A DNA stretch of 64,000 bases, from positions 248,001 through 312,000 of the IMG/VR virus record IMGVR_UViG_3300003322_000571, one strand, 5' to 3'. Shown one piece after another: positions 1,613-56,916 of this stretch; the first letter of the stretch is position 1; each line of letters starts with the position of its first letter. The notes beneath the pieces were generated by a model that saw only the letters and a program-made list of their open reading frames with translations, ran no database searches and had not been told where the DNA came from. A program made the translations under genes and the position numbers.

Positions 1613-1839
1613 CACTTAGGTCAGGCGATCTGGATAACATCCGAAAGATGTTCGCCAGCTTGAAACAAGACATCGACAATCTGATACTCAATATTACTGA
1701 GCTGACGTACTTCATGCGAGGTGCGATTCAATACGACGACATGTTTGACATGTGTTTCCTAGAGCGGCAGAAGGTGAGTGAATTCATCGAAAAACGCCTG
1801 GAAGTAGAGAAGAAGAAACCACCATCGCAGCAATATTGA
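1600..1839 (+). CDS. T4 gp51-like hub assembly protein; probably the -1 frameshift extension of the gp26-like ORF
   Basis: The segment ITELTYFMRGAIQYDDMFDMCFLERQKVSEFIEKRLE resembles gp51-family C-termini. The frame is open through T TTT TTT at 1600-1606. The only ATG (1648) has a weak RBS. Confidence 0.65.
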   Translation, partial: FFYLTLRSGDLDNIRKMFASLKQDIDNLILNITELTYFMRGAIQYDDMFDMCFLERQKVSEFIEKRLEVEKKKPPSQQY

Positions 1840-2252
1840 GCTGAACTAAGTGATCTAGTCCTGCATGCCGGCATTATCAGCTTCGCAGAACTCGTAGGAG
1901 CGCTTCGCTTATCCTACGAGTTCTCGTTTCGTTTGAAGTACCTAGCGGAAATAAACGGGAAGCAATCACAATCCCTCCCCCGCATTTTCGTAGCTGACTG
2001 GAAGAACCTCACGGCCTGGGCGATACAGGCTTGCACTGATAGCGCAGCCCACGCTGGTCAACTTTTGCGGACTTCATACCGCGGGCTCGTTAGCTGTCGC
2101 TCTGTTCCCACTCCCGGACGAGTAAGGGTCTACGTCCGTGCGTTTCTACTTTAGCAGCTTGTTCCTGCTTGATTTGGAATTGTGTCGTCTAGAGTGCCGC
2201 GAAGGCAATTGAGGCTGTTATAACAACAGCTCTGATATGTCTGTGTAGAGTC
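1840..2252. ncRNA. Hairpin-dense non-coding element (structured RNA or replication origin; family not recognised)
   Basis: At least 7 stem-loops in ~410 nt, including a perfect 13-bp stem (1887-1899/1912-1924); no credible ORF. Confidence 0.5.
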
Positions 2253-2732
2253 TTAGGATTTGAACAAAGCCAGCCAATAGGCGTCGGTGACGTCGGCTAA
2301 CCCTGAAGATTTTTTCAATTTAGCGGTAACAAATTTGTCCATTACGTTCTGTGGTACGGCTGTGATCATTGCTGCCTTATCGGACTTCCCAGTCCCTGTG
2401 GCGAACTTCTTAAGTGAAGTTGGTGCAATGATTTTGACGACCGTGCTTGGGTGTTTGACTTTCAAACGTGTGATCACAACAAATTGCAATCCTGCCAAGT
2501 CACGCGTTGCATCTCCTCGAATACCAAATGCAAGACCTTCAATGCGGACATCCTTGATTGAGTACTGTGTAACGAGATCCTCAATGAAGTCTGCGAGCTC
2601 AATTGCTCGCTCGTAGACGTCTTTGTCTTTCGTAGTCTTGAACGTGCCAAACTTGTGAATTACGTTGCTTTCGTCAACGATCACGTAGCCAGTGCACGTA
2701 TATGATTGGTCGATACCGAGAGTATATTGCAT
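2253..2732 (-). CDS. ruvC: RuvC-like Holliday junction resolvase
   Basis: RNase H-fold acidic motifs LGIDQS..TGY, VRIEG..FG, KKFATGTGKSDK and D.TDAYW; 159 aa. Confidence 0.85.
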   Translation of the reverse strand: MQYTLGIDQSYTCTGYVIVDESNVIHKFGTFKTTKDKDVYERAIELADFIEDLVTQYSIKDVRIEGLAFGIRGDATRDLAGLQFVVITRLKVKHPSTVVKIIAPTSLKKFATGTGKSDKAAMITAVPQNVMDKFVTAKLKKSSGLADVTDAYWLALFKS

Positions 2733-2797
2733 GGGGTCTCCTATACCTATATAGGCAAGAAGACGCCCCGGGTGACAATGTTAGATGATCATATGGG

Positions 2798-3118
2798 TTA
2801 AATGGTCAGTTGATGGTCTTGTAGCTGCTCTAGAGTATATGTCTCATCACTGTTCGGCAAGAACCAAGTCCATACATCATGCCTGTCGCGGTACCACTCT
2901 TGAACAGTCCAGTACCAACCACGGCGAATTTCCCGAACAAATGTGTGTGGATTCGTGTACACCACATAATGGTGGAAAGTATTATGACGAACCATCTCAA
3001 CTCGTCGTTGTTTCTGTTTGTTAACTCGAATGATCACTTCAATTTCTGGATCACGGTAAAACTCTACGGGAAATGCCTCACCTTCCTCCAGTTCGATTTC
3101 AATTACGCTCAGCGTCAT
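2798..3118 (-). CDS. Hypothetical protein
   Basis: 106-aa ORF overlapping the gp46 stop on the same strand; no motif recognised. Confidence 0.6.
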   Translation of the reverse strand: MTLSVIEIELEEGEAFPVEFYRDPEIEVIIRVNKQKQRRVEMVRHNTFHHYVVYTNPHTFVREIRRGWYWTVQEWYRDRHDVWTWFLPNSDETYTLEQLQDHQLTI

Positions 3119-4892
3119 CTTGCTCTCCTTGTTCGTCCTTGATATAACTGAACCCCTTTTCCATTTGAATCTTTAGGGTGTTCTTAAAAATACTGCCTAC
3201 TTCATCACGGTGTGATACGATGTACATCGACAAACCGTCAGTTTGAGCTTTCAGTTTCAGTAACTTTGCAGCAGCCTGAACACCAACAGCATCGAGACCG
3301 TGATCGAGCACTTCATCCAACATACACACGTTAACGCGATTACTCATACGTTCGCGAACGTCCTTAAAAGCGAGCGACAAGGCAATGTTGACGCGTGCTC
3401 GTTGACCAGCTGACAAGTTACCGAAATCTAGTTCTCGGCCAAACTGTGAAATTTTCGCTGTCATTTCATGTGTGAACTCAACGACATGCGGCAACCCTAG
3501 TTGCGACAAGTTTTCTCGAAGGTTCTTGTTCAGAACAGGGAGCTTTTGGTTGAGCAGTTCTTTACGAACAAAACTGTCCTTCTTCGTCAACAGCTTCAGC
3601 AGGAACTTTTGGTGTTCAATTTCACGCGTTGCCGTATTGACTTCGTCGTAATTGATTGGTTCCAGCTCAGCGTTCAGCAGTTCTTCATAAGGTTCGACAA
3701 ACGGATTGATCGCGTTTTCTTGCTCAACGATCTTTGCTCGGATGTTTTCCGTTTGGTTCTTGATGTTTTGTAGTTCTTCAAGGTCGTGTACAGTAACCTT
3801 TTCACGGACTTCACTAATCTTCGCACGTAGTTCCTCGAGTCGTTCCGCAGCTTTTTCAATCAACGGCTGTAGTTCTTCGATCTTTGTGAACAAAGAATCG
3901 TTCTCTGCGATCAAACCGTCGATCTTACCGGCTGCTTCTGCATAGTCCTGCAAGCAATACGGACACTTAGCATCACGCAAGTGTGACAACTGACTTTCGT
4001 TGTCTTGGTACTGCTTCATCAACTCTTTCATTAGACGTTGGTCAGCCTTCAGCTGTTCACTGAATGTATTGCGTTCTTCGGTCAAAGCTGAAAGCTCTGT
4101 GTGGAGAGCACGCTCGACATCGAAGTCGATTTGTTCAACACGATTCAGCTTGTCTTTCAGATTTTCAATCTGCTCGGTGTTCTGACGAATCCAAGAAGCT
4201 ACACGTGCTTTCGCGCTTTCAACCAGTGTCAAATGACGCGCGTGTTCCTTCTCAAGCAGTGCGACCTTCTCCTTCTTCATTTGAAGCGAGAGTTCCCAGT
4301 CCTTTGTTTCCTTCTTGAGTAGTTCAGCCTTTGCAGACAGTTCCGTAAGGCCAAATAGCTCTTCGATGATGTCTTTTTGGTTGGGGGCGGTTGCGTGCGT
4401 CTGAGGAAGATCAAGGAACGGTGTATGAGAAGCACTGAATACGACGATACGAACAAACAGCTCGTACGGAATACCAATTGTGTTTTCAATCAGCTTGTTC
4501 GTGCCAGCACTGTCAACCGTTTTATCTTCACCATTGACGTAGAAGTACGTGTTGTTGCCAGCTGCGCCGGCCTTTGTCTTGCGTTCACGAATGATCTTAT
4601 ACAGGTTGCCATCACCCGTTGAAAATTCAAGAGTGACAACCATGTTCTTCCCGTTAATGTTGTTAACGAGATTGTCCTTGGAAATTTTGCTGATCGGCTT
4701 GTCGTAGATAGCGTAAGTGAGTGCGTTAATCAACGCACTCTTACCTACACCGTTCGCACCAATACCCTCAGCAGTCTTGTCGAGATCCTCACCTACGATC
4801 AACGTAGTGCCGGGACGCTCGAGTTCGAAAATTGTAGTGTTGTTACCGTAGCTGAGGAAGTTCCTCAGCGTCAGTGTATGGAAACGAATCAT
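3099..4892 (-). CDS. 46: Recombination/repair nuclease ATPase subunit (T4 gp46 / SbcC / Rad50)
   Basis: Walker A NGVGKS, long coiled coil with CPYC zinc hook, signature LSAGQ, Walker B MLDEVLD, H-loop VSHR. Confidence 0.93.
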   Translation of the reverse strand: MIRFHTLTLRNFLSYGNNTTIFELERPGTTLIVGEDLDKTAEGIGANGVGKSALINALTYAIYDKPISKISKDNLVNNINGKNMVVTLEFSTGDGNLYKIIRERKTKAGAAGNNTYFYVNGEDKTVDSAGTNKLIENTIGIPYELFVRIVVFSASHTPFLDLPQTHATAPNQKDIIEELFGLTELSAKAELLKKETKDWELSLQMKKEKVALLEKEHARHLTLVESAKARVASWIRQNTEQIENLKDKLNRVEQIDFDVERALHTELSALTEERNTFSEQLKADQRLMKELMKQYQDNESQLSHLRDAKCPYCLQDYAEAAGKIDGLIAENDSLFTKIEELQPLIEKAAERLEELRAKISEVREKVTVHDLEELQNIKNQTENIRAKIVEQENAINPFVEPYEELLNAELEPINYDEVNTATREIEHQKFLLKLLTKKDSFVRKELLNQKLPVLNKNLRENLSQLGLPHVVEFTHEMTAKISQFGRELDFGNLSAGQRARVNIALSLAFKDVRERMSNRVNVCMLDEVLDHGLDAVGVQAAAKLLKLKAQTDGLSMYIVSHRDEVGSIFKNTLKIQMEKGFSYIKDEQGEQDDAERN

Positions 4893-6031
4893 GAGATTGT
4901 AAGGCGTTTGTATTGTTCAATCAGCAAATTGTTGTCGATGTGATCACTTTTGATTTCCTGGAGCATTTTGATCACCAAGTCATCAACGGTGCTGATTTCT
5001 TCGTCTTTGTTAGCGACCTCTTCCTTAGTCTCTTCGGAGACTTCAGTGCTGGTCAGCGCTTCATTTAGTTGTTGTGTTTCTTCGAGCGCGAACTCACGAA
5101 GCTTATACGCATCCATCATCTGCTGACGGATCAATGTACTTTCCTCGAAGGTAATAGGAACGTCAACCAAGCATTTTACACGTGCATTACGGTACATCGT
5201 CACTTTATCATCAAGTAGCTGTGACAGCTTAATCTTGAGGTACTTTGGACAGTCTGGCCAGTCGATGAACGTCATATCATCGTCGATGTGATCGTACGTC
5301 ATCATTCCGCGATTGAAGTCGCCAGCATCGCCAAAGTCCATTGGAAACGTGTTTCCCATGTAGACGATATTATCTTGCTCTTGTCGCTTGTGAAAGTGAC
5401 CGGATACGATATGCTTAGGACCTTTAAAGTCGGAAGCTGCAGGGCCAGTAGGCATTTTGACGTTGTAACCAGTAACGATAAAGCCCTGGAATTCAAAGTG
5501 ACCAGCCCAGAACGGAATCTTCAAGTACTCCTGAAGACCAGGGTACTCGTCGTGGAACATATAAGGGCTAAACAACGCTCCACCCTCAATCTGATCAATA
5601 ATTTTAGGTTCATCGATAACAACGAAATTGCTGAACTCTTTGAATGTAACGATCGAATGAATTTCACGCGAGTTGCGATGGTATAGGTCGTGGTTACCAA
5701 CAACGAAGAACACCGGCAAACCGAGATTGTTCAACATTGATGCGCCTTCGTGTGAACTATTCAACGTAGCAATGTTGATTGAACTACGGTTCTCGTTCCA
5801 GTCTCCTAGAAAACCAATGTAGTCAATCGTTGGATCTGCCTGTACTTGTTCGCAAAACCATGCGAGAAAGTCGAGGCAGTCTTGATTATGAATTGGTGAA
5901 TTGGACTTTTTACCGAAGTGGATATCGGTGAAAAAAGCTCCTTTACGGAGCTTCTTTGTCGATCGCTTTGGTGTGTAGGTGCAAGTATTATCTGGCACCA
6001 GACTAACACCGGGACTAACTAGGTTCGCCAT
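4889..6031 (-). CDS. 47: Recombination/repair nuclease subunit (T4 gp47 / SbcD / Mre11)
   Basis: Metallophosphoesterase motifs FTDIHFG, LGDW, VGNHD, GHFE and SGHFH; coupled to gp46 and gp55. Confidence 0.92.
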   Translation of the reverse strand: MANLVSPGVSLVPDNTCTYTPKRSTKKLRKGAFFTDIHFGKKSNSPIHNQDCLDFLAWFCEQVQADPTIDYIGFLGDWNENRSSINIATLNSSHEGASMLNNLGLPVFFVVGNHDLYHRNSREIHSIVTFKEFSNFVVIDEPKIIDQIEGGALFSPYMFHDEYPGLQEYLKIPFWAGHFEFQGFIVTGYNVKMPTGPAASDFKGPKHIVSGHFHKRQEQDNIVYMGNTFPMDFGDAGDFNRGMMTYDHIDDDMTFIDWPDCPKYLKIKLSQLLDDKVTMYRNARVKCLVDVPITFEESTLIRQQMMDAYKLREFALEETQQLNEALTSTEVSEETKEEVANKDEEISTVDDLVIKMLQEIKSDHIDNNLLIEQYKRLTIS

Positions 6032-56455: not shown

Positions 56456-56539
56456 TGGTTCTCCTTTGCTCTGTACGAAACTATTTACGCTGGAGAAATA
56501 GCAGTGATCTTTACCCGTATACCCAGGGACCGGAAATGA

Positions 56540-56563
56540 AGGAAGGCGCCGAAGCGCCTTCCT
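56540..56563 (-). terminator. Terminator hairpin with UUCG loop downstream of tmRNA
   Basis: - strand reads AGGAAGGCGC-TTCG-GCGCCTTCCT-TCATTT. Confidence 0.75.
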
Positions 56564-56888
56564 ATGATACTGTTGTTATCGGGGTATCATGCCCTCAGTC
56601 AAGCATTAAGCTGCGAGACGGAAGTTACCTTCATTTGCATTTAGGTTGTTTTCTTGAGTTACGGTCTTCGCCACCGGCATGCGCCATCCATCTCAGTAAC
56701 TCTGTCGAAACCAGGGCAGGCCCATGACAGAAGATTCAACGCTACGTTACTTTTCGAGGGCCTAGGTTCCCTTTAACCGTTTCACGCAGCACTAAACCTT
56801 CTGTGGTGGACCTGGCGGGAATCGAACCCGCGTCCAAAATCCTTCAACATCAGTCGAATTACATGCTTCATCTGCTTGCGCAGATACG
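56564..56888 (-). ncRNA. ssrA: Circularly permuted (two-piece) tmRNA
   Basis: Acceptor piece ends ...GGACGCGGGTTCGATTCCCGCCAGGTCCACCA (3' end 56804). After an 80-nt spacer the coding piece starts GGGCCTG..TTCGAC (56723). The acceptor stem contains G3:U70. GCATGC (56677-82) pairs with GCATGT (56861-66). Tag frame 56638-56606 reads ANEGNFRLAA*. Confidence 0.92.
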
Positions 56889-56916
56889 TCTATTTAAGCA
56901 TAGAACCCTAAAACTA

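What the first reader, a model, noticed from the sequence alone, without database searches (positions are those of the whole stretch)
1840..2252. Unexplained ~410-nt hairpin-dense non-coding element directly downstream of the RuvC-like gene
Seen: in an otherwise tightly packed genome this gap holds a perfect 13-bp stem (1887-99/1912-24) capped on the - strand by GCGAAGC, further hairpins at 2014-30, 2041-55, 2067-82, 2115-38, 2153-69, 2195-2207 and 2214-30, and a possible enclosing helix 2057-62/1993-98. Known: d(GCGAAGC) is an exceptionally stable ssDNA mini-hairpin found in phage origins and promoters. Inference: (a) an unnamed large ncRNA co-transcribed with the 159-aa RuvC-fold nuclease, an arrangement reminiscent of TnpB/IscB plus omega-RNA, though the protein looks like a plain resolvase; or (b) a replication origin or primase site. 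I do not recognise a known family.
Basis: partly seen in the sequence, partly recalled or inferred. Interest (0 to 1): 0.75.

Follow-up and report, generated by a model that had tools for sequence, protein, structure and literature searches.

The report
New pseudoknotted RNA family in jumbo phages
The gap after the RuvC gene holds a conserved, intricately folded non-coding RNA of about 300 nt that matches no described RNA family, occurs twice in this 350-kb phage genome and recurs in about 30 related uncultured jumbo phages; its job is unknown, but it is neither a guide RNA for RuvC nor a replication origin.

Summary
Window 1840-2252 is a 413-nt ORF-free gap between convergent genes: a conserved 62-aa ORF on + and a canonical 159-aa RuvC on -. 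The 13-bp stem and most of the listed hairpins exist.

Single-sequence folding is unremarkable (z -1.3 and -1.7). Comparison is decisive:
- A second diverged copy lies 77 kb away in the same genome, upstream of an NMNAT-Nudix (natV-like) gene.
- A covariance model finds 33 distinct members in related metagenomic jumbo phages, always oriented like RuvC.
- In 27 base pairs, 98.7% of cells are canonical and 18 pairs show compensatory double changes. Controls give 26-40% and 2-8.
- Two crossing helices are supported by covariation; a third long-range pairing is only compatible.
- Rfam 15, GenBank phages and the literature searches give nothing.

The RNA most likely lies on the RuvC (minus) strand. 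Best reading: a free-standing structured RNA made as the 3' end of the gp47-gp46-RuvC transcript and closed by a bidirectional terminator hairpin.

An OMEGA-like RuvC partnership is rejected: the RNA occurs without RuvC, and RuvC occurs without the RNA. An origin is not supported: no iterons, no AT-rich stretch, no skew extremum. Function is unknown and there are no transcript data.

The parts
2253..2732 (-). Context: the 159-aa RuvC Holliday-junction resolvase gene. It is the last gene of the leftward block gp47 (4889-6031), gp46 (3099-4892), a 106-aa ORF (2798-3118), then RuvC.
   Evidence: Pfam RuvC PF02075 scores 35.1 bits against a cut-off of 22.2. gp46 matches SMC_N/AAA_23 and gp47 matches Metallophos. 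There are 575 homologues with E<=1e-10.
2195..2232 (-). Two spacer hairpins between the RuvC stop and P1: about 2211-2232 (GAGCUGUUG...CAACAGCCUC) and 2195-2207 (UGCC UUCGC GGCA). They are specific to the subgroup window/L008/L009.
   Evidence: Upstream alignment. The first hairpin has three different complementary stems in window, L008 and L009. The second is conserved in sequence.
2153..2169 (-). P1 hairpin, AGCAG-GAACAAG-CUGCU. The loop consensus is RAACAAN.
   Evidence: At least 10 different complementary stems occur among 33 members, for example GCAG/CUGC, GCUG/CAGC, ACUG/CAGU, CCUG/CAGG, GUUG/CAAC and CGUC/GACG.
2139..2152 (-). J1/2, the conserved single strand AAAGUAGAAACGCA (family consensus AUAACUAGAAACR).
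   Evidence: Nearly invariant in alignments A5 and A7.
2115..2138 (-). P2 hairpin, CGGACG / CGUCCG, with the conserved loop ..ACCCUUACU.
   Evidence: At least 12 different complementary stems occur across members. The loop's CCCU is invariant.
2083..2114 (-). Three-way module: J2/3 GGAGU, helix P3a (GGG 2107-2109 with CCC 2083-2085), AACAGA, the variable hairpin P3 (2093-2100), then UAACGAG.
   Evidence: P3a changes G-C to A-U or G-U (column pair 64/94). All five P3 pairs covary and the hairpin length varies from 8 to 18 nt. The whole module is missing in the minimal variants L148, L191, L141 and L059.
2067..2082 (-). P4 hairpin, GCGG-UAUGAAGU-CCGC.
   Evidence: GCGG/CCGC here against GUGG/CCAC elsewhere (pair 96/109). 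The loop UAUGAAGY is conserved in the close group.
2031..2066 (-). J4/5 AAAAGUUGACC (2056-2066), the P5 region (2041-2055; here AGCG-UGGGCUG-CGCU) and J5/6 (2031-2040).
   Evidence: In other members P5 is GGGAG...CUCCU or CUCCC with full Watson-Crick pairing (L122, L104, L134, L066, L033, L059). This subgroup carries an 8-nt deletion and a replacement hairpin.
2014..2030 (-). P6 hairpin, GCCUG-UAUCGCC-CAGGC. Its 7-nt loop pairs with J5/6 (GC with GC) to form a pseudoknot.
   Evidence: All five P6 pairs covary. The loop/J5/6 pairing changes in step (GC/GC, AAC/GUU, GAC/GUC) and is absent where the loop has 4 nt.
1977..2013 (-). P7/P8 pseudoknot: CGUGAGG (2007-2013), loop UUCUUCCAGUCA, GC (1993-1994), UACG (1989-1992), AAAAU, then GCGGGGG (1977-1983).
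   Evidence: P7 pair 174/194 reads C-G 7, U-A 6, U-G 1. P8 pair 191/203 reads G-C 10, A-U 4, with none broken. The two helices cross.
1957..1976 (-). P9 hairpin, AGGGAUUGUGAUUGCUUCCC (GGGA/UCCC).
   Evidence: Predicted by RNAalifold. Present in about two thirds of the close members and absent in own2, L013 and L016, so support is weaker.
1887..1956 (-). An A-rich linker (1925-1956), then P10, the perfect 13-bp hairpin (1887-1924) with a purine-rich apex UAAGCGAAGCGC. On the + strand the same hairpin is followed by CGUUUCGUUU, which looks like the terminator of the 62-aa ORF.
   Evidence: The inverted repeat is I2. Every one of the 11 members inspected has a long hairpin here with an unrelated stem sequence and a GAA-rich apex (GAACGAAGUGAA and variants), including the copies at natV.
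1860..1886 (-). The GCGAAGC mini-hairpin (1880-1886) and the tail UGAUAAUGCCGGCAUGCAGG (1860-1879).
   Evidence: GCGNAGC follows P10 in most type-1 copies. The variants CCGUAGG (L016) and GUGUAGC (L066) keep the pairing. The motif AURAUGCCGSCAUG is shared with own2, L005, L104, L008 and L009.
1651..1839 (+). Context: the conserved 62-aa ORF that converges on the element, downstream of the gp26-like baseplate hub gene (773-1612).
   Evidence: T4_baseplate PF12322 scores 56 bits for 773-1612. The 62-aa ORF is conserved and was called as a gene in relatives.

Best explanation
The gap encodes a member of an undescribed family of highly structured, pseudoknotted non-coding RNA.

**Size and strand.** The core is about 220-250 nt, and about 300 nt with its terminal hairpin. 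It is read from the window's minus strand, the same strand as RuvC.

**How it is made (inferred).** It is produced as the 3'-terminal part of the gp47-gp46-orf-RuvC transcript. In several relatives its first hairpin overlaps the RuvC stop codon. It is closed and protected by a long hairpin (P10) that also serves as the terminator of the converging 62-aa ORF and baseplate genes.

**Fold.**
- P1 and P2 hairpins.
- An optional three-way module (P3a, P3, P4).
- P5.
- A P6 hairpin whose loop pairs with upstream sequence.
- A P7/P8 pseudoknot, then a G-tract that could pair with the P2 loop.
- P9, P10 and a GCGNAGC mini-hairpin.

**What it does (inferred).** It acts as a free-standing RNA, that is a protein-bound, ligand-binding or catalytic RNA. 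It is not an mRNA leader, because the widespread copy has no gene downstream. Some of these phages carry a second paralogue upstream of the natV-like gene.

**Shown:** family, fold, orientation relative to the genes, distribution.
**Inferred:** transcribed strand, co-transcription with RuvC, action in trans.
**Unknown:** biochemical function.
For: **Copies and distribution**
- A second colinear copy in the same genome at about 70% identity, with sharply conserved blocks.
- The same two positions, after RuvC and before natV, recur in two other phages: the IMG/VR record behind L024, found again as a near-identical record behind L023, and the pair L003/L005.
- Covariance model R1 finds 33 distinct members, at E from 1e-7 to 1e-76, always in RuvC orientation.

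**Fold**
- 27 pairs in 14 sequences: 98.7% of cells canonical and 18 pairs with compensatory double changes.
- Controls: partners slid by 1-3 columns give 26-40% and 2-8 pairs. In 1000 shuffles the maxima were 85.9% and 14 pairs.
- P7 and P8 each covary, and they cross.
- At least 12 different P2 stems and at least 10 different P1 stems.

**Non-coding**
- Gene callers placed no gene in this interval at 8 loci.
- Insertions and deletions of 1, 2, 4 and 8 nt.

**Strand**
- 12 G-U against 4 A-C cells in the supported helices.
- Conserved unpaired columns on this strand are A 24, G 19, C 14, U 9. A-rich unpaired positions are typical of structured RNAs (established knowledge).
- At all three natV loci the element points the same way as every flanking gene.
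- In member L011 the P3 and P6 loops read UUCG on this strand. P10 carries GAA triloops on this strand.
- The P9-P10 tail folds more stably on this strand in most members.

**Novelty**
- No Rfam match, even at E<=10.
- No blastn match in 50,697 GenBank phage records.
- Nothing in the literature searches.
Against: - There are no transcript data. The genome is a root-metagenome assembly. The only RNA-library signals are 151-238-nt contigs at depth 2, which have no direction and may be DNA.
- Folding of this sequence alone is not exceptional.
- The strand call is only moderately supported. Core MFE does not differ between strands (mean -0.9 kcal/mol, p=0.43). Hairpin-by-hairpin energies slightly favour the other strand for P1, P2 and P6. 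I traced the P6 difference, and partly the P2 difference, to flanking or loop positions outside the covarying pairs; P1 was not examined.
- P10 has only a weak U-tract on the RuvC strand, so termination there is inferred.
- P5 is ambiguous in the close group, and P9 is missing in some members.
- No promoter or processing site was identified.
- Nothing here speaks directly to function.
Confidence: 0.6

Rival explanations
1. A cis-acting regulatory RNA, such as a riboswitch or a put/EAR-like antitermination element. It would sense a ligand or modify RNA polymerase and so control termination or read-through at P10. At the second locus this would govern natV. At the RuvC locus it would govern antisense read-through into the baseplate genes.
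For: - The type-2 copy lies directly upstream of, and points the same way as, the NMNAT-Nudix gene in three phages.
- The core is followed by a strong hairpin in every member inspected.
- The size and the junction and pseudoknot-rich fold resemble large aptamers.
Against: - The widespread, probably ancestral copy sits at the end of an operon facing a converging gene, so it has no downstream gene to regulate.
- P10 lacks a clear U-tract on this strand in most members.
- I saw no conserved alternative (anti-terminator) pairing between the core and the very variable P10 stems.
- About 110-200 nt separate the element from natV.
Confidence: 0.15
2. The functional strand is the plus strand. The element would then be a structured 3' extension of, or an RNA following, the 62-aa ORF/baseplate transcript. 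Equivalently, it would be an antisense RNA to the RuvC 3' end.
For: - Watson-Crick covariation is symmetric between strands.
- Core MFE is the same on both strands.
- There are 4 A-C cells, in L134 and L157 (P1) and in L013 and L148 (P7), which would be G-U on the other strand.
Against: - On + the element would lie after a good intrinsic terminator (P10 followed by a U-rich tract) and would have no terminator of its own.
- At the three natV loci it would run against all neighbouring genes.
- G-U outnumbers A-C by 12 to 4.
- Its conserved loops would be pyrimidine-rich, with only 9 of 66 being A.
Confidence: 0.12
3. A DNA-level element: a replication origin, a primase or PriA-type loading site built on d(GCGAAGC) hairpins, or a recombination hot spot used by gp46/47 and RuvC.
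For: - There are two GCGAAGC motifs (1880-1886 and inside the P10 loop) and GCGNAGC is conserved. d(GCGAAGC) is an unusually stable DNA mini-hairpin known from ssDNA-phage origins (established knowledge).
- The element lies next to recombination genes. In T4, oriF lies beside the baseplate genes 25-26-51 (from memory, not tested here).
Against: - No iterons or direct repeats.
- The gap has more G+C than its flanks, not less.
- Cumulative GC skew peaks at 192 kb and shows nothing at 250 kb.
- Over 200 nt carry compensatory changes, crossing helices and invariant purine-rich loops. This fits a folded single strand with tertiary structure better than a duplex protein-binding site.
Confidence: 0.05
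4. An RNA partner of the phage's own Ro60 (TROVE) protein, that is an unusually large Y-RNA-like molecule.
For: - The genome encodes a TROVE protein (571-aa ORF, 77.8 bits summed).
- P10 apices are rich in CGAA. A few (L053, L059) contain GACGAACG, which fits the GNCGAAN0-1G motif of bacterial Y RNAs (PMC4201824).
Against: - Y RNAs are 80-130 nt, carry the motif in a stem formed by the 5' and 3' ends, usually have a tRNA-like domain, and lie within 4 kb of rsr on the same strand (PMC4201824).
- Here the copies lie at least 87 kb from the TROVE gene.
- A better candidate, a 98-nt tRNA-like Rfam hit, lies about 1.1 kb upstream of the TROVE ORF on the same strand.
- RsoM2USA has TROVE but no copy of this RNA.
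- Five records that carry the RNA show no TROVE, although they are only 18-72% complete.
Confidence: 0.04
5. An OMEGA-like system in which the RNA guides or activates the adjacent RuvC-fold nuclease.
For: - The RNA is immediately 3' of a RuvC-fold gene and points the same way, in more than 25 phages.
- P1 overlaps the RuvC stop codon in L002 and L003.
Against: - The protein is a 159-aa canonical RuvC with the catalytic D8/E65/D147/D150 columns conserved and no extra domain.
- The RNA also occurs away from any RuvC.
- A gene intervenes in L013 and L014.
- Many RuvC homologues of similar divergence have no such RNA and no gap.
- There is no variable guide-like end and there are no transposon ends.
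- The complex prediction was not folded and gives no evidence either way.
Confidence: 0.03

Closest known systems
Large orphan structured ncRNAs linked to phages and prophages (GOLLD, ROOL; Rfam families, cryo-EM in bioRxiv 10.1101/2024.12.08.627333)
   Same: Large, phage-encoded RNAs with many conserved helices, pseudoknots and invariant unpaired purines. They are not leaders of a downstream gene and their function is unknown.
   Different: This RNA is about 300 nt rather than about 600-800 nt. Rfam finds no similarity in sequence or structure. It is not next to tRNA genes. It is restricted to one clade of T4-like jumbo phages. Multimer formation was not tested.
IscB/TnpB omega-RNA (OMEGA systems; HEARO RNA)
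   Same: A structured RNA of a few hundred nt directly 3' of a RuvC-fold nuclease gene, pointing the same way and sometimes overlapping its end.
   Different: The nuclease here is a minimal dimeric Holliday-junction resolvase, not a 350-500-aa RNA-guided effector. The RNA and the gene occur independently of each other. There is no guide segment and no transposon.
Bidirectional intrinsic terminators between convergent genes
   Same: P10 is a long G+C-rich hairpin placed between converging transcription units. It has an A-tract on one side and a U-rich tract on the other.
   Different: Only the last 40-50 nt fit this description. The apex sequence is conserved (GAA-rich, S-turn-like), and the hairpin is kept at the natV loci, where no gene converges.
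Bacterial and phage Y RNAs (YrlA), partners of Ro60
   Same: The phage encodes Ro60, and the RNA has CGAA-containing purine motifs.
   Different: Size, architecture, position relative to rsr and the lack of a tRNA-like domain all differ. A separate tRNA-like candidate lies next to the TROVE gene.
Riboswitches
   Same: A compact fold rich in pseudoknots and junctions with invariant unpaired nucleotides. One paralogue lies upstream of a metabolic (NAD) gene.
   Different: The main copy lies downstream of genes and has nothing after it. No known aptamer class matches.
d(GCGAAGC) mini-hairpins of ssDNA-phage origins
   Same: The heptamer occurs twice here, and GCGNAGC is conserved across the family.
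   Different: Here it is a small terminal accessory of a 300-nt conserved fold. Nothing else about the locus looks like an origin.

Membership tests
Any Rfam 15 family | A covariance-model match at the family's gathering score, or at least a suggestive E-value | tested here: not met
   The only gathering-score hits in the window are the tmRNA models at 56.5 kb. In 1700-2400 at E<=10 there are only noise hits to eukaryotic miRNA and lncRNA models. Eight further family loci at E<=5 gave nothing consistent.
OMEGA (IscB/TnpB + omega-RNA) | An effector with a split RuvC domain plus WED/REC/TNB-type domains, typically at least 350 aa | tested here: not met
   159 aa. Only PF02075 RuvC (35 bits) and a weak DUF3882 hit match. 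48 homologues align over 157-180 aa.
OMEGA (IscB/TnpB + omega-RNA) | RNA and nuclease always occur together | tested here: not met
   The RNA occurs without RuvC at natV loci. RuvC homologue loci without a model hit: about 45 of 70 and 61 of 80. Most of the IMG/VR ones have a gene directly after RuvC.
OMEGA (IscB/TnpB + omega-RNA) | A variable guide segment at one RNA end, abutting a transposon end | tested here: not met
   Both ends are conserved structures (P1; P10 plus GCGNAGC). The locus is a conserved syntenic phage core region.
Structured ncRNA (general) | Conserved helices supported by compensatory substitutions above controls | tested here: met
   98.7% canonical cells and 18 of 27 pairs compensatory. 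Slid controls give 26-40% and 2-8 pairs. The shuffle maxima are 85.9% and 14 pairs. RNAalifold on 5 sequences already found 12 compensatory pairs.
Structured ncRNA (general) | A detectable discrete transcript | not testable with these tools
   No RNA-seq exists for this uncultured phage. Only undirected low-depth contigs were found.
Y RNA / YrlA | 80-130 nt; a terminal stem carrying GNCGAAN0-1G; a tRNA-like module; within 4 kb of the Ro60 gene on the same strand (PMC4201824) | tested here: not met
   The RNA is about 300 nt and has no terminal stem or tRNA-like module. The copies lie at 250 and 327 kb and the TROVE gene at about 64 kb. The motif occurs only in some P10 apices.
Replication origin | Iterons or initiator boxes, an AT-rich unwinding element, a strand-skew inflection | tested here: not met
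   No repeat families beyond chance two-copy matches. GC is 51.8% against 44-46% in the flanks. The skew maximum is at 192 kb. Origin activity itself cannot be tested here.
Intrinsic terminator (for the P10 part only) | A G+C-rich hairpin followed by a U-tract | tested here: inconclusive
   On the + strand the 13-bp stem is followed by CGUUUCGUUU, and relatives have clearer U-tracts. On the - strand only 0-5 U follow.
Protein-coding gene | A conserved open frame | tested here: not met
   No gene was called in the interval at 8 loci. Length differences between members are not multiples of 3. Open frames are inconsistent between members.

The most novel reading that the evidence does not exclude
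The two paralogous RNAs could be a new class of trans-acting functional RNA of jumbo phages. Candidates are a ribozyme, a ligand-sensing RNA, or the RNA subunit or decoy of an RNP. It would act on host or phage nucleic-acid or NAD-linked processes, for example as an anti-defence decoy. It would be made early from the recombination operon and again beside the NAD-rebuilding gene natV. The tools could not test any of this, and no result contradicts it: the fold complexity, the invariant purine-rich loops and the retention of two diverged copies are all compatible.
Probability: 0.25. Interest if true: 0.85.

Novelty: new variant of a known kind. Interest (0 to 1): 0.66.

Why it matters
Structured RNAs of this size and complexity are rare. 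The known bacterial and phage examples have turned out to be ribozymes, riboswitches, RNP scaffolds or, more recently, self-assembling RNA cages.

This family has more than 30 members with clear covariation, at least two pseudoknots and a modular architecture. Some of these phages keep two copies. It is therefore a well-defined new target for RNA structure and function work, in a poorly understood clade of soil and freshwater jumbo phages. Those phages already carry a large RNA toolkit: this genome has 56 tRNAs, a permuted tmRNA and a Ro60 homologue.

The finding also corrects annotation. The 413-nt gap is a gene, and so is the matching gap upstream of natV.

Showing that the RNA is not tied to RuvC removes a tempting but wrong link to RNA-guided nucleases.

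Tried and rejected
**Searches that found nothing**
- Rfam at gathering and permissive thresholds, on the window and on eight related loci.
- blastn of the core against 50,697 GenBank phages.
- An exact-pattern scan of metagenome contigs. One IMG/VR pattern hit, L007, was a chance match inside a protease ORF.
- The model finds no copy in the cultured relatives XacN1, Xoo-sp13 and RsoM2USA. That includes an unfiltered search of the 1.4-kb ORF-free gap at the syntenic position in RsoM2USA.
- Literature searches.

**Tests that gave no usable answer**
- RNA-seq: no usable runs. The reads laid gave only 151-238-nt undirected contigs.
- Complex prediction with a RuvC dimer plus the RNA was not folded. 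It is evidence neither for nor against binding.
- Strand by thermodynamics: whole-core MFE does not discriminate. Per-hairpin energies were misleading for P2 and P6, where part of the difference lies outside the covarying pairs; P1 was not checked.

**Ideas I dropped**
- A kissing pairing between CACUUU in the core and GAAGUG in the P10 loop. It looked attractive, with compensatory forms in L016 and in the window, but it fails in L008 and L009 and competes with P5.
- The RNAalifold helix CCCAC/GYGGG. It has A-C in 5 of 11 sequences.
- Resemblances to 5S rRNA (CCGAAC..GAAGUGAAAC; GAGAGUAGGGAACUGCC) and to RNase P CR-I/CR-V. These are short motifs in the wrong topology and the Rfam models do not match. 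I recalled them from memory and they failed on inspection.
- Ro60 as a partner: no co-occurrence.
- A recurring promoter motif: the palindrome upstream of RuvC occurs only once.
Full report
**1. Setting**

The window is bases 248,001-312,000 of a single-contig virus record. The record is 350,089 bp long, has 48% G+C and direct terminal repeats, and was assembled from a root metagenome.

The gene content is that of a T4-like jumbo phage. Its gp46/gp47 region is distantly related to Xanthomonas phages XacN1 and Xoo-sp13 and to Ralstonia phage RsoM2USA.

Around the finding the genes are as follows:
- Plus strand: a gp26-like baseplate hub gene (773-1612, PF12322) and a conserved 62-aa ORF (1651-1839).
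- Minus strand: gp47 (Metallophos), gp46 (SMC_N/AAA_23), a 106-aa ORF and a 159-aa RuvC (2253-2732; PF02075, 35 bits).

The 413-nt gap at 1840-2252 therefore lies between converging transcription units. It is downstream of both.

**2. The observation**

- The 13-bp perfect inverted repeat 1887-1899/1912-1924 is real.
- Its loop on the minus strand is UAAGCGAAGCGC. A second GCGAAGC lies next to it at 1880-1886.
- Taken alone, however, the sequence does not fold better than shuffled versions: z = -1.27 on + and -1.70 on -.
- Hairpin density by itself would therefore not have justified the finding.

**3. What changes the picture: other copies**

*A second copy in the same genome.* A short-word BLAST of the gap against the phage's own genome gave five colinear matches in inverse orientation near 327.5 kb.
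- Aligned, the two copies are about 70% identical.
- Blocks of near-identity are separated by variable stretches with small insertions and deletions.
- The second copy fills a 480-nt gap between genes that all point the same way. These are a CoaE-like gene, a CoaD-like gene, two small ORFs, and then an NMN-adenylyltransferase/Nudix gene (natV-like; PF01467 plus PF00293).

*Copies in related phages.*
- A 23-nt conserved block found a syntenic copy in an IMG/VR contig.
- Shorter patterns found two more, one after RuvC and one before natV.
- RuvC homologues from the large protein collection (575 at E<=1e-10) led to eight assembly loci with the same synteny. Gene callers left the interval empty in all eight.
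- A profile found the element in seven of those eight.

*Model search.* I built a covariance model (R1) from 13 sequences.
- It recovered 23 matches among 70 loci.
- It recovered 19 matches among 80 further metagenome loci.
- After removing duplicates there are 33 distinct members.

*Copy number.*
- The phage's own genome has exactly two full copies.
- Another IMG/VR phage, seen in two samples, also has two. Its second copy again lies just upstream of natV, after CoaE, CoaD and a small ORF.

*Where it is absent.*
- No copy is detectable in XacN1, Xoo-sp13 or RsoM2USA.
- No blastn match exists in GenBank phages.

**4. Structure**

All sequences below are written on the RuvC strand.

| Element | Window coordinates | Notes |
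|---|---|---|
| P1 | 2153-2169 | loop RAACAAN |
| J1/2 | 2139-2152 | AUAACUAGAAACR |
| P2 | 2115-2138 | loop ..ACCCUUACU |
| P3a | GGG 2107-2109 / CCC 2083-2085 | encloses AACAGA, the variable hairpin P3 (2093-2100) and UAACGAG |
| P4 | 2067-2082 | loop UAUGAAGY |
| J4/5 | 2056-2066 | AAGUUGACC |
| P5 | 2041-2055 | subgroup-specific form here |
| P6 | 2014-2030 | loop pairs with J5/6 |
| P7 / P8 | 1977-2013 | the two helices cross |
| P9 | 1957-1976 | weaker support |
| linker | 1925-1956 | A-rich |
| P10 | 1887-1924 | the 13-bp hairpin |
| mini-hairpin | 1880-1886 | GCGAAGC |
| tail | 1860-1879 | UGAUAAUGCCGGCAUG.. |

*Covariation statistics.* I counted 27 pairs of P1, P3a, P3, P4, P6, P7 and P8 in the 14 best-aligned sequences:
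- 98.7% of 373 cells are canonical pairs.
- 18 pairs carry compensatory double changes.
- With the 3' partners slid by 1-3 columns the figures are 26-40% and 2-8 pairs.
- In 1000 shuffles the maxima were 85.9% and 14 pairs.

*Individual helices.*
- P2, which the model did not align in register, has at least 12 unrelated complementary stems. P1 has at least 10.
- P7 position 174/194 reads C-G 7, U-A 6, U-G 1.
- P8 position 191/203 reads G-C 10, A-U 4, with none broken.
- P7 and P8 cross, which makes a pseudoknot.
- The 7-nt P6 loop pairs with J5/6, and the pairing changes in step (GC/GC, AAC/GUU, GAC/GUC). It is absent exactly where the loop has shrunk to 4 nt.
- P5 is fully Watson-Crick (GGGAG/CUCCU or CUCCC) in the more distant members. 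It is degenerate or rich in G-U in the close group. In the window's subgroup it is replaced by a different hairpin after an 8-nt deletion.
- A pairing of the invariant CCCU of the P2 loop with the GGGG after P8 fits the few changes seen (UCCU in the second copy; AGGG in L033). It is not proven.

*Modularity.* Four members lack the whole P3a-P3-P4 module, so it is an optional domain.

*P10.* In every one of the 11 members inspected it has an unrelated stem sequence but a purine-rich apex of the type GAACGAAGUGAA. RNAfold draws this apex as a C(GAA)G triloop flanked by G/A mismatches.

**5. Which strand**

Watson-Crick covariation cannot tell the strands apart. Several independent lines favour the RuvC strand:
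- In the supported helices of 33 members there are 12 G-U cells against 4 A-C cells.
- The 66 conserved unpaired columns are A 24, G 19, C 14, U 9 on this strand. Enrichment of unpaired A is a general property of structured RNAs (established knowledge). On the other strand A would be the rarest base.
- At the three natV loci the element points the same way as all its neighbours.
- At the RuvC loci this orientation puts the RNA between a stop codon and a hairpin. The other orientation puts it after a good terminator with nothing to end it.
- The UUCG loops of member L011 and the GAA triloops of P10 read correctly only on this strand.
- The P9-P10 tail is more stable on this strand in most members.

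Two tests did not help:
- Whole-core MFE is the same on both strands.
- Per-hairpin energies lean slightly the other way for P1, P2 and P6. I traced the P6 difference, and partly the P2 difference, to flanking or loop positions outside the covarying pairs. One example is A154/C172 beside P6, where C172 belongs to P7. I did not check P1.

I put the RuvC strand at about 0.8.

**6. What it is not**

*Not protein-coding.*
- No gene was called in the interval at eight loci.
- Length differences between members are not multiples of 3.
- Open frames are inconsistent between members.

*Not a described RNA family*.

*Not an OMEGA-type partner of RuvC.*
- The protein is a minimal canonical resolvase.
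- The RNA occurs without RuvC at the natV loci.
- A 175-205-aa gene separates the two in L013 and L014.
- Most RuvC homologues of comparable divergence have a gene directly after them and no such RNA.
- The complex prediction was not run by the tool and counts for nothing.

*Not evidently an origin.*
- No iterons.
- G+C is above the flanks.
- There is no skew extremum at this position.

*Probably not the phage's Y RNA.*
- The genome does encode a Ro60/TROVE protein.
- The copies lie at least 87 kb from it.
- A 98-nt tRNA-like element lies about 1.1 kb upstream of it on the same strand, where YrlA-type RNAs are expected (PMC4201824).
- TROVE and this RNA do not co-occur in the records I could test.

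**7. How it most likely works**

*Shown:* a conserved, modular, pseudoknotted fold; two paralogues in three phages; a fixed orientation; a position at the 3' end of the gp47-gp46-RuvC block, or between a small ORF and natV.

*Inferred:*
- The RNA is transcribed with the upstream genes. P1 overlaps the RuvC stop codon in L002 and L003, and I found no promoter.
- Its 3' end is defined or protected by P10. P10 doubles as the terminator of the converging late genes, because U-rich tracts follow it on the plus strand.
- Because the widespread copy has no gene downstream, a classical leader or riboswitch role cannot be the family's general function.
- I therefore favour a free-standing RNA acting in trans: protein-bound, ligand-binding or catalytic.

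The retention of P10 with its conserved apex at the natV loci, where no gene converges, argues that P10 belongs to the RNA and is not only a terminator.

*Alternative.* A cis role in termination or read-through at P10 remains the main alternative. It would fit the natV copy.

**8. Novelty and limits**

I found no earlier description in Rfam 15, in GenBank phage records or in the papers searched.

The closest known things are the large orphan phage-associated RNAs (GOLLD, ROOL). They share the kind, not the sequence or fold.

Limits:
- There is no transcript evidence. Two RNA-library contigs of 151-238 nt at depth 2 may be DNA.
- The strand call is only moderately supported.
- P5, P9 and the P2-loop/G-tract pairing are uncertain.
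- There are no functional data.
- All members come from uncultured phages, so experiments need a cloned locus or a newly isolated relative.

Noticed in passing
window 56515-56906 (-): A phage-encoded tmRNA of the permuted (two-piece) type. It matches Rfam beta_tmRNA (126 bits) and tmRNA_permuted (112 bits). ARAGORN reads the tag peptide as ANEGNFRLAA.
   Followed up: partly
own genome outside the window, G000:C1 (whole record): ARAGORN finds 56 tRNA genes in clusters at 0-47 kb and 332-350 kb. Two of them have a CUA anticodon (labelled tRNA-Pyl, at 332868-332944 and 344214-344286), so they are possible amber suppressors. One is an odd 4-base-anticodon call at 342827-342896.
   Followed up: no
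own genome about 63.5-65.3 kb (L112:1333-3048, +) and L112:91-188 (+): A 571-aa ORF with a TROVE/Ro60 domain (56 bits; 77.8 bits summed). About 1.1 kb upstream on the same strand is a 98-nt element that matches the Rfam tRNA model (32.4 bits) but that ARAGORN did not call. It is a likely YrlA-type Y RNA. RtcB and reverse transcriptase are absent from the genome. RsoM2USA also has a TROVE gene.
   Followed up: partly
own genome 327386-327760 (L001:3386-3760, +): The second copy of the RNA. It lies in a CoA/NAD gene cluster: a CoaE-like gene (191 aa), a CoaD-like gene (175 aa), a 170-aa ORF, a 67-aa Cys-rich ORF, then the RNA, then the NMNAT-Nudix natV-like gene.
   Followed up: yes
own genome about 134.2-135.5 kb: About 1.2 kb without long ORFs. 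It contains a repeated motif of about 32 nt, GGTTACTAGTGCGCAGCGCTAGGTTACTAGTA, which includes a GCGCAGC mini-hairpin, and a weak partial hit of model R1 (E=0.04, model positions 148-211).
   Followed up: no
L108:992-2392 (Ralstonia phage RsoM2USA MG752970.1, about 251.6-253.0 kb): A 1.4-kb unannotated stretch with no ORF above 77 aa, at the position syntenic with the finding, between the gp46-side genes and the gp26-like baseplate gene. Model R1 does not match it. This phage has a different 185-aa ORF where RuvC would be.
   Followed up: partly
L015:3704-4369: In one 313-kb relative an HNH endonuclease gene and a 175-aa ORF occupy the interval between RuvC and the baseplate genes. The RNA is not detected there.
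   Followed up: no
window 2740-2755: A near-palindrome, CCTATACCTATATAGG, lies directly upstream of the RuvC ribosome-binding site. It occurs only once in the window. A loosely similar TATATACCTATATGATGG lies upstream of natV in L005.
   Followed up: partly
L013:2944-3561 and L014:2974-3501: Some relatives carry an extra 175-205-aa gene between RuvC and the RNA. It has a P-loop, with a weak AAA_18 match for the L014 protein.
   Followed up: no
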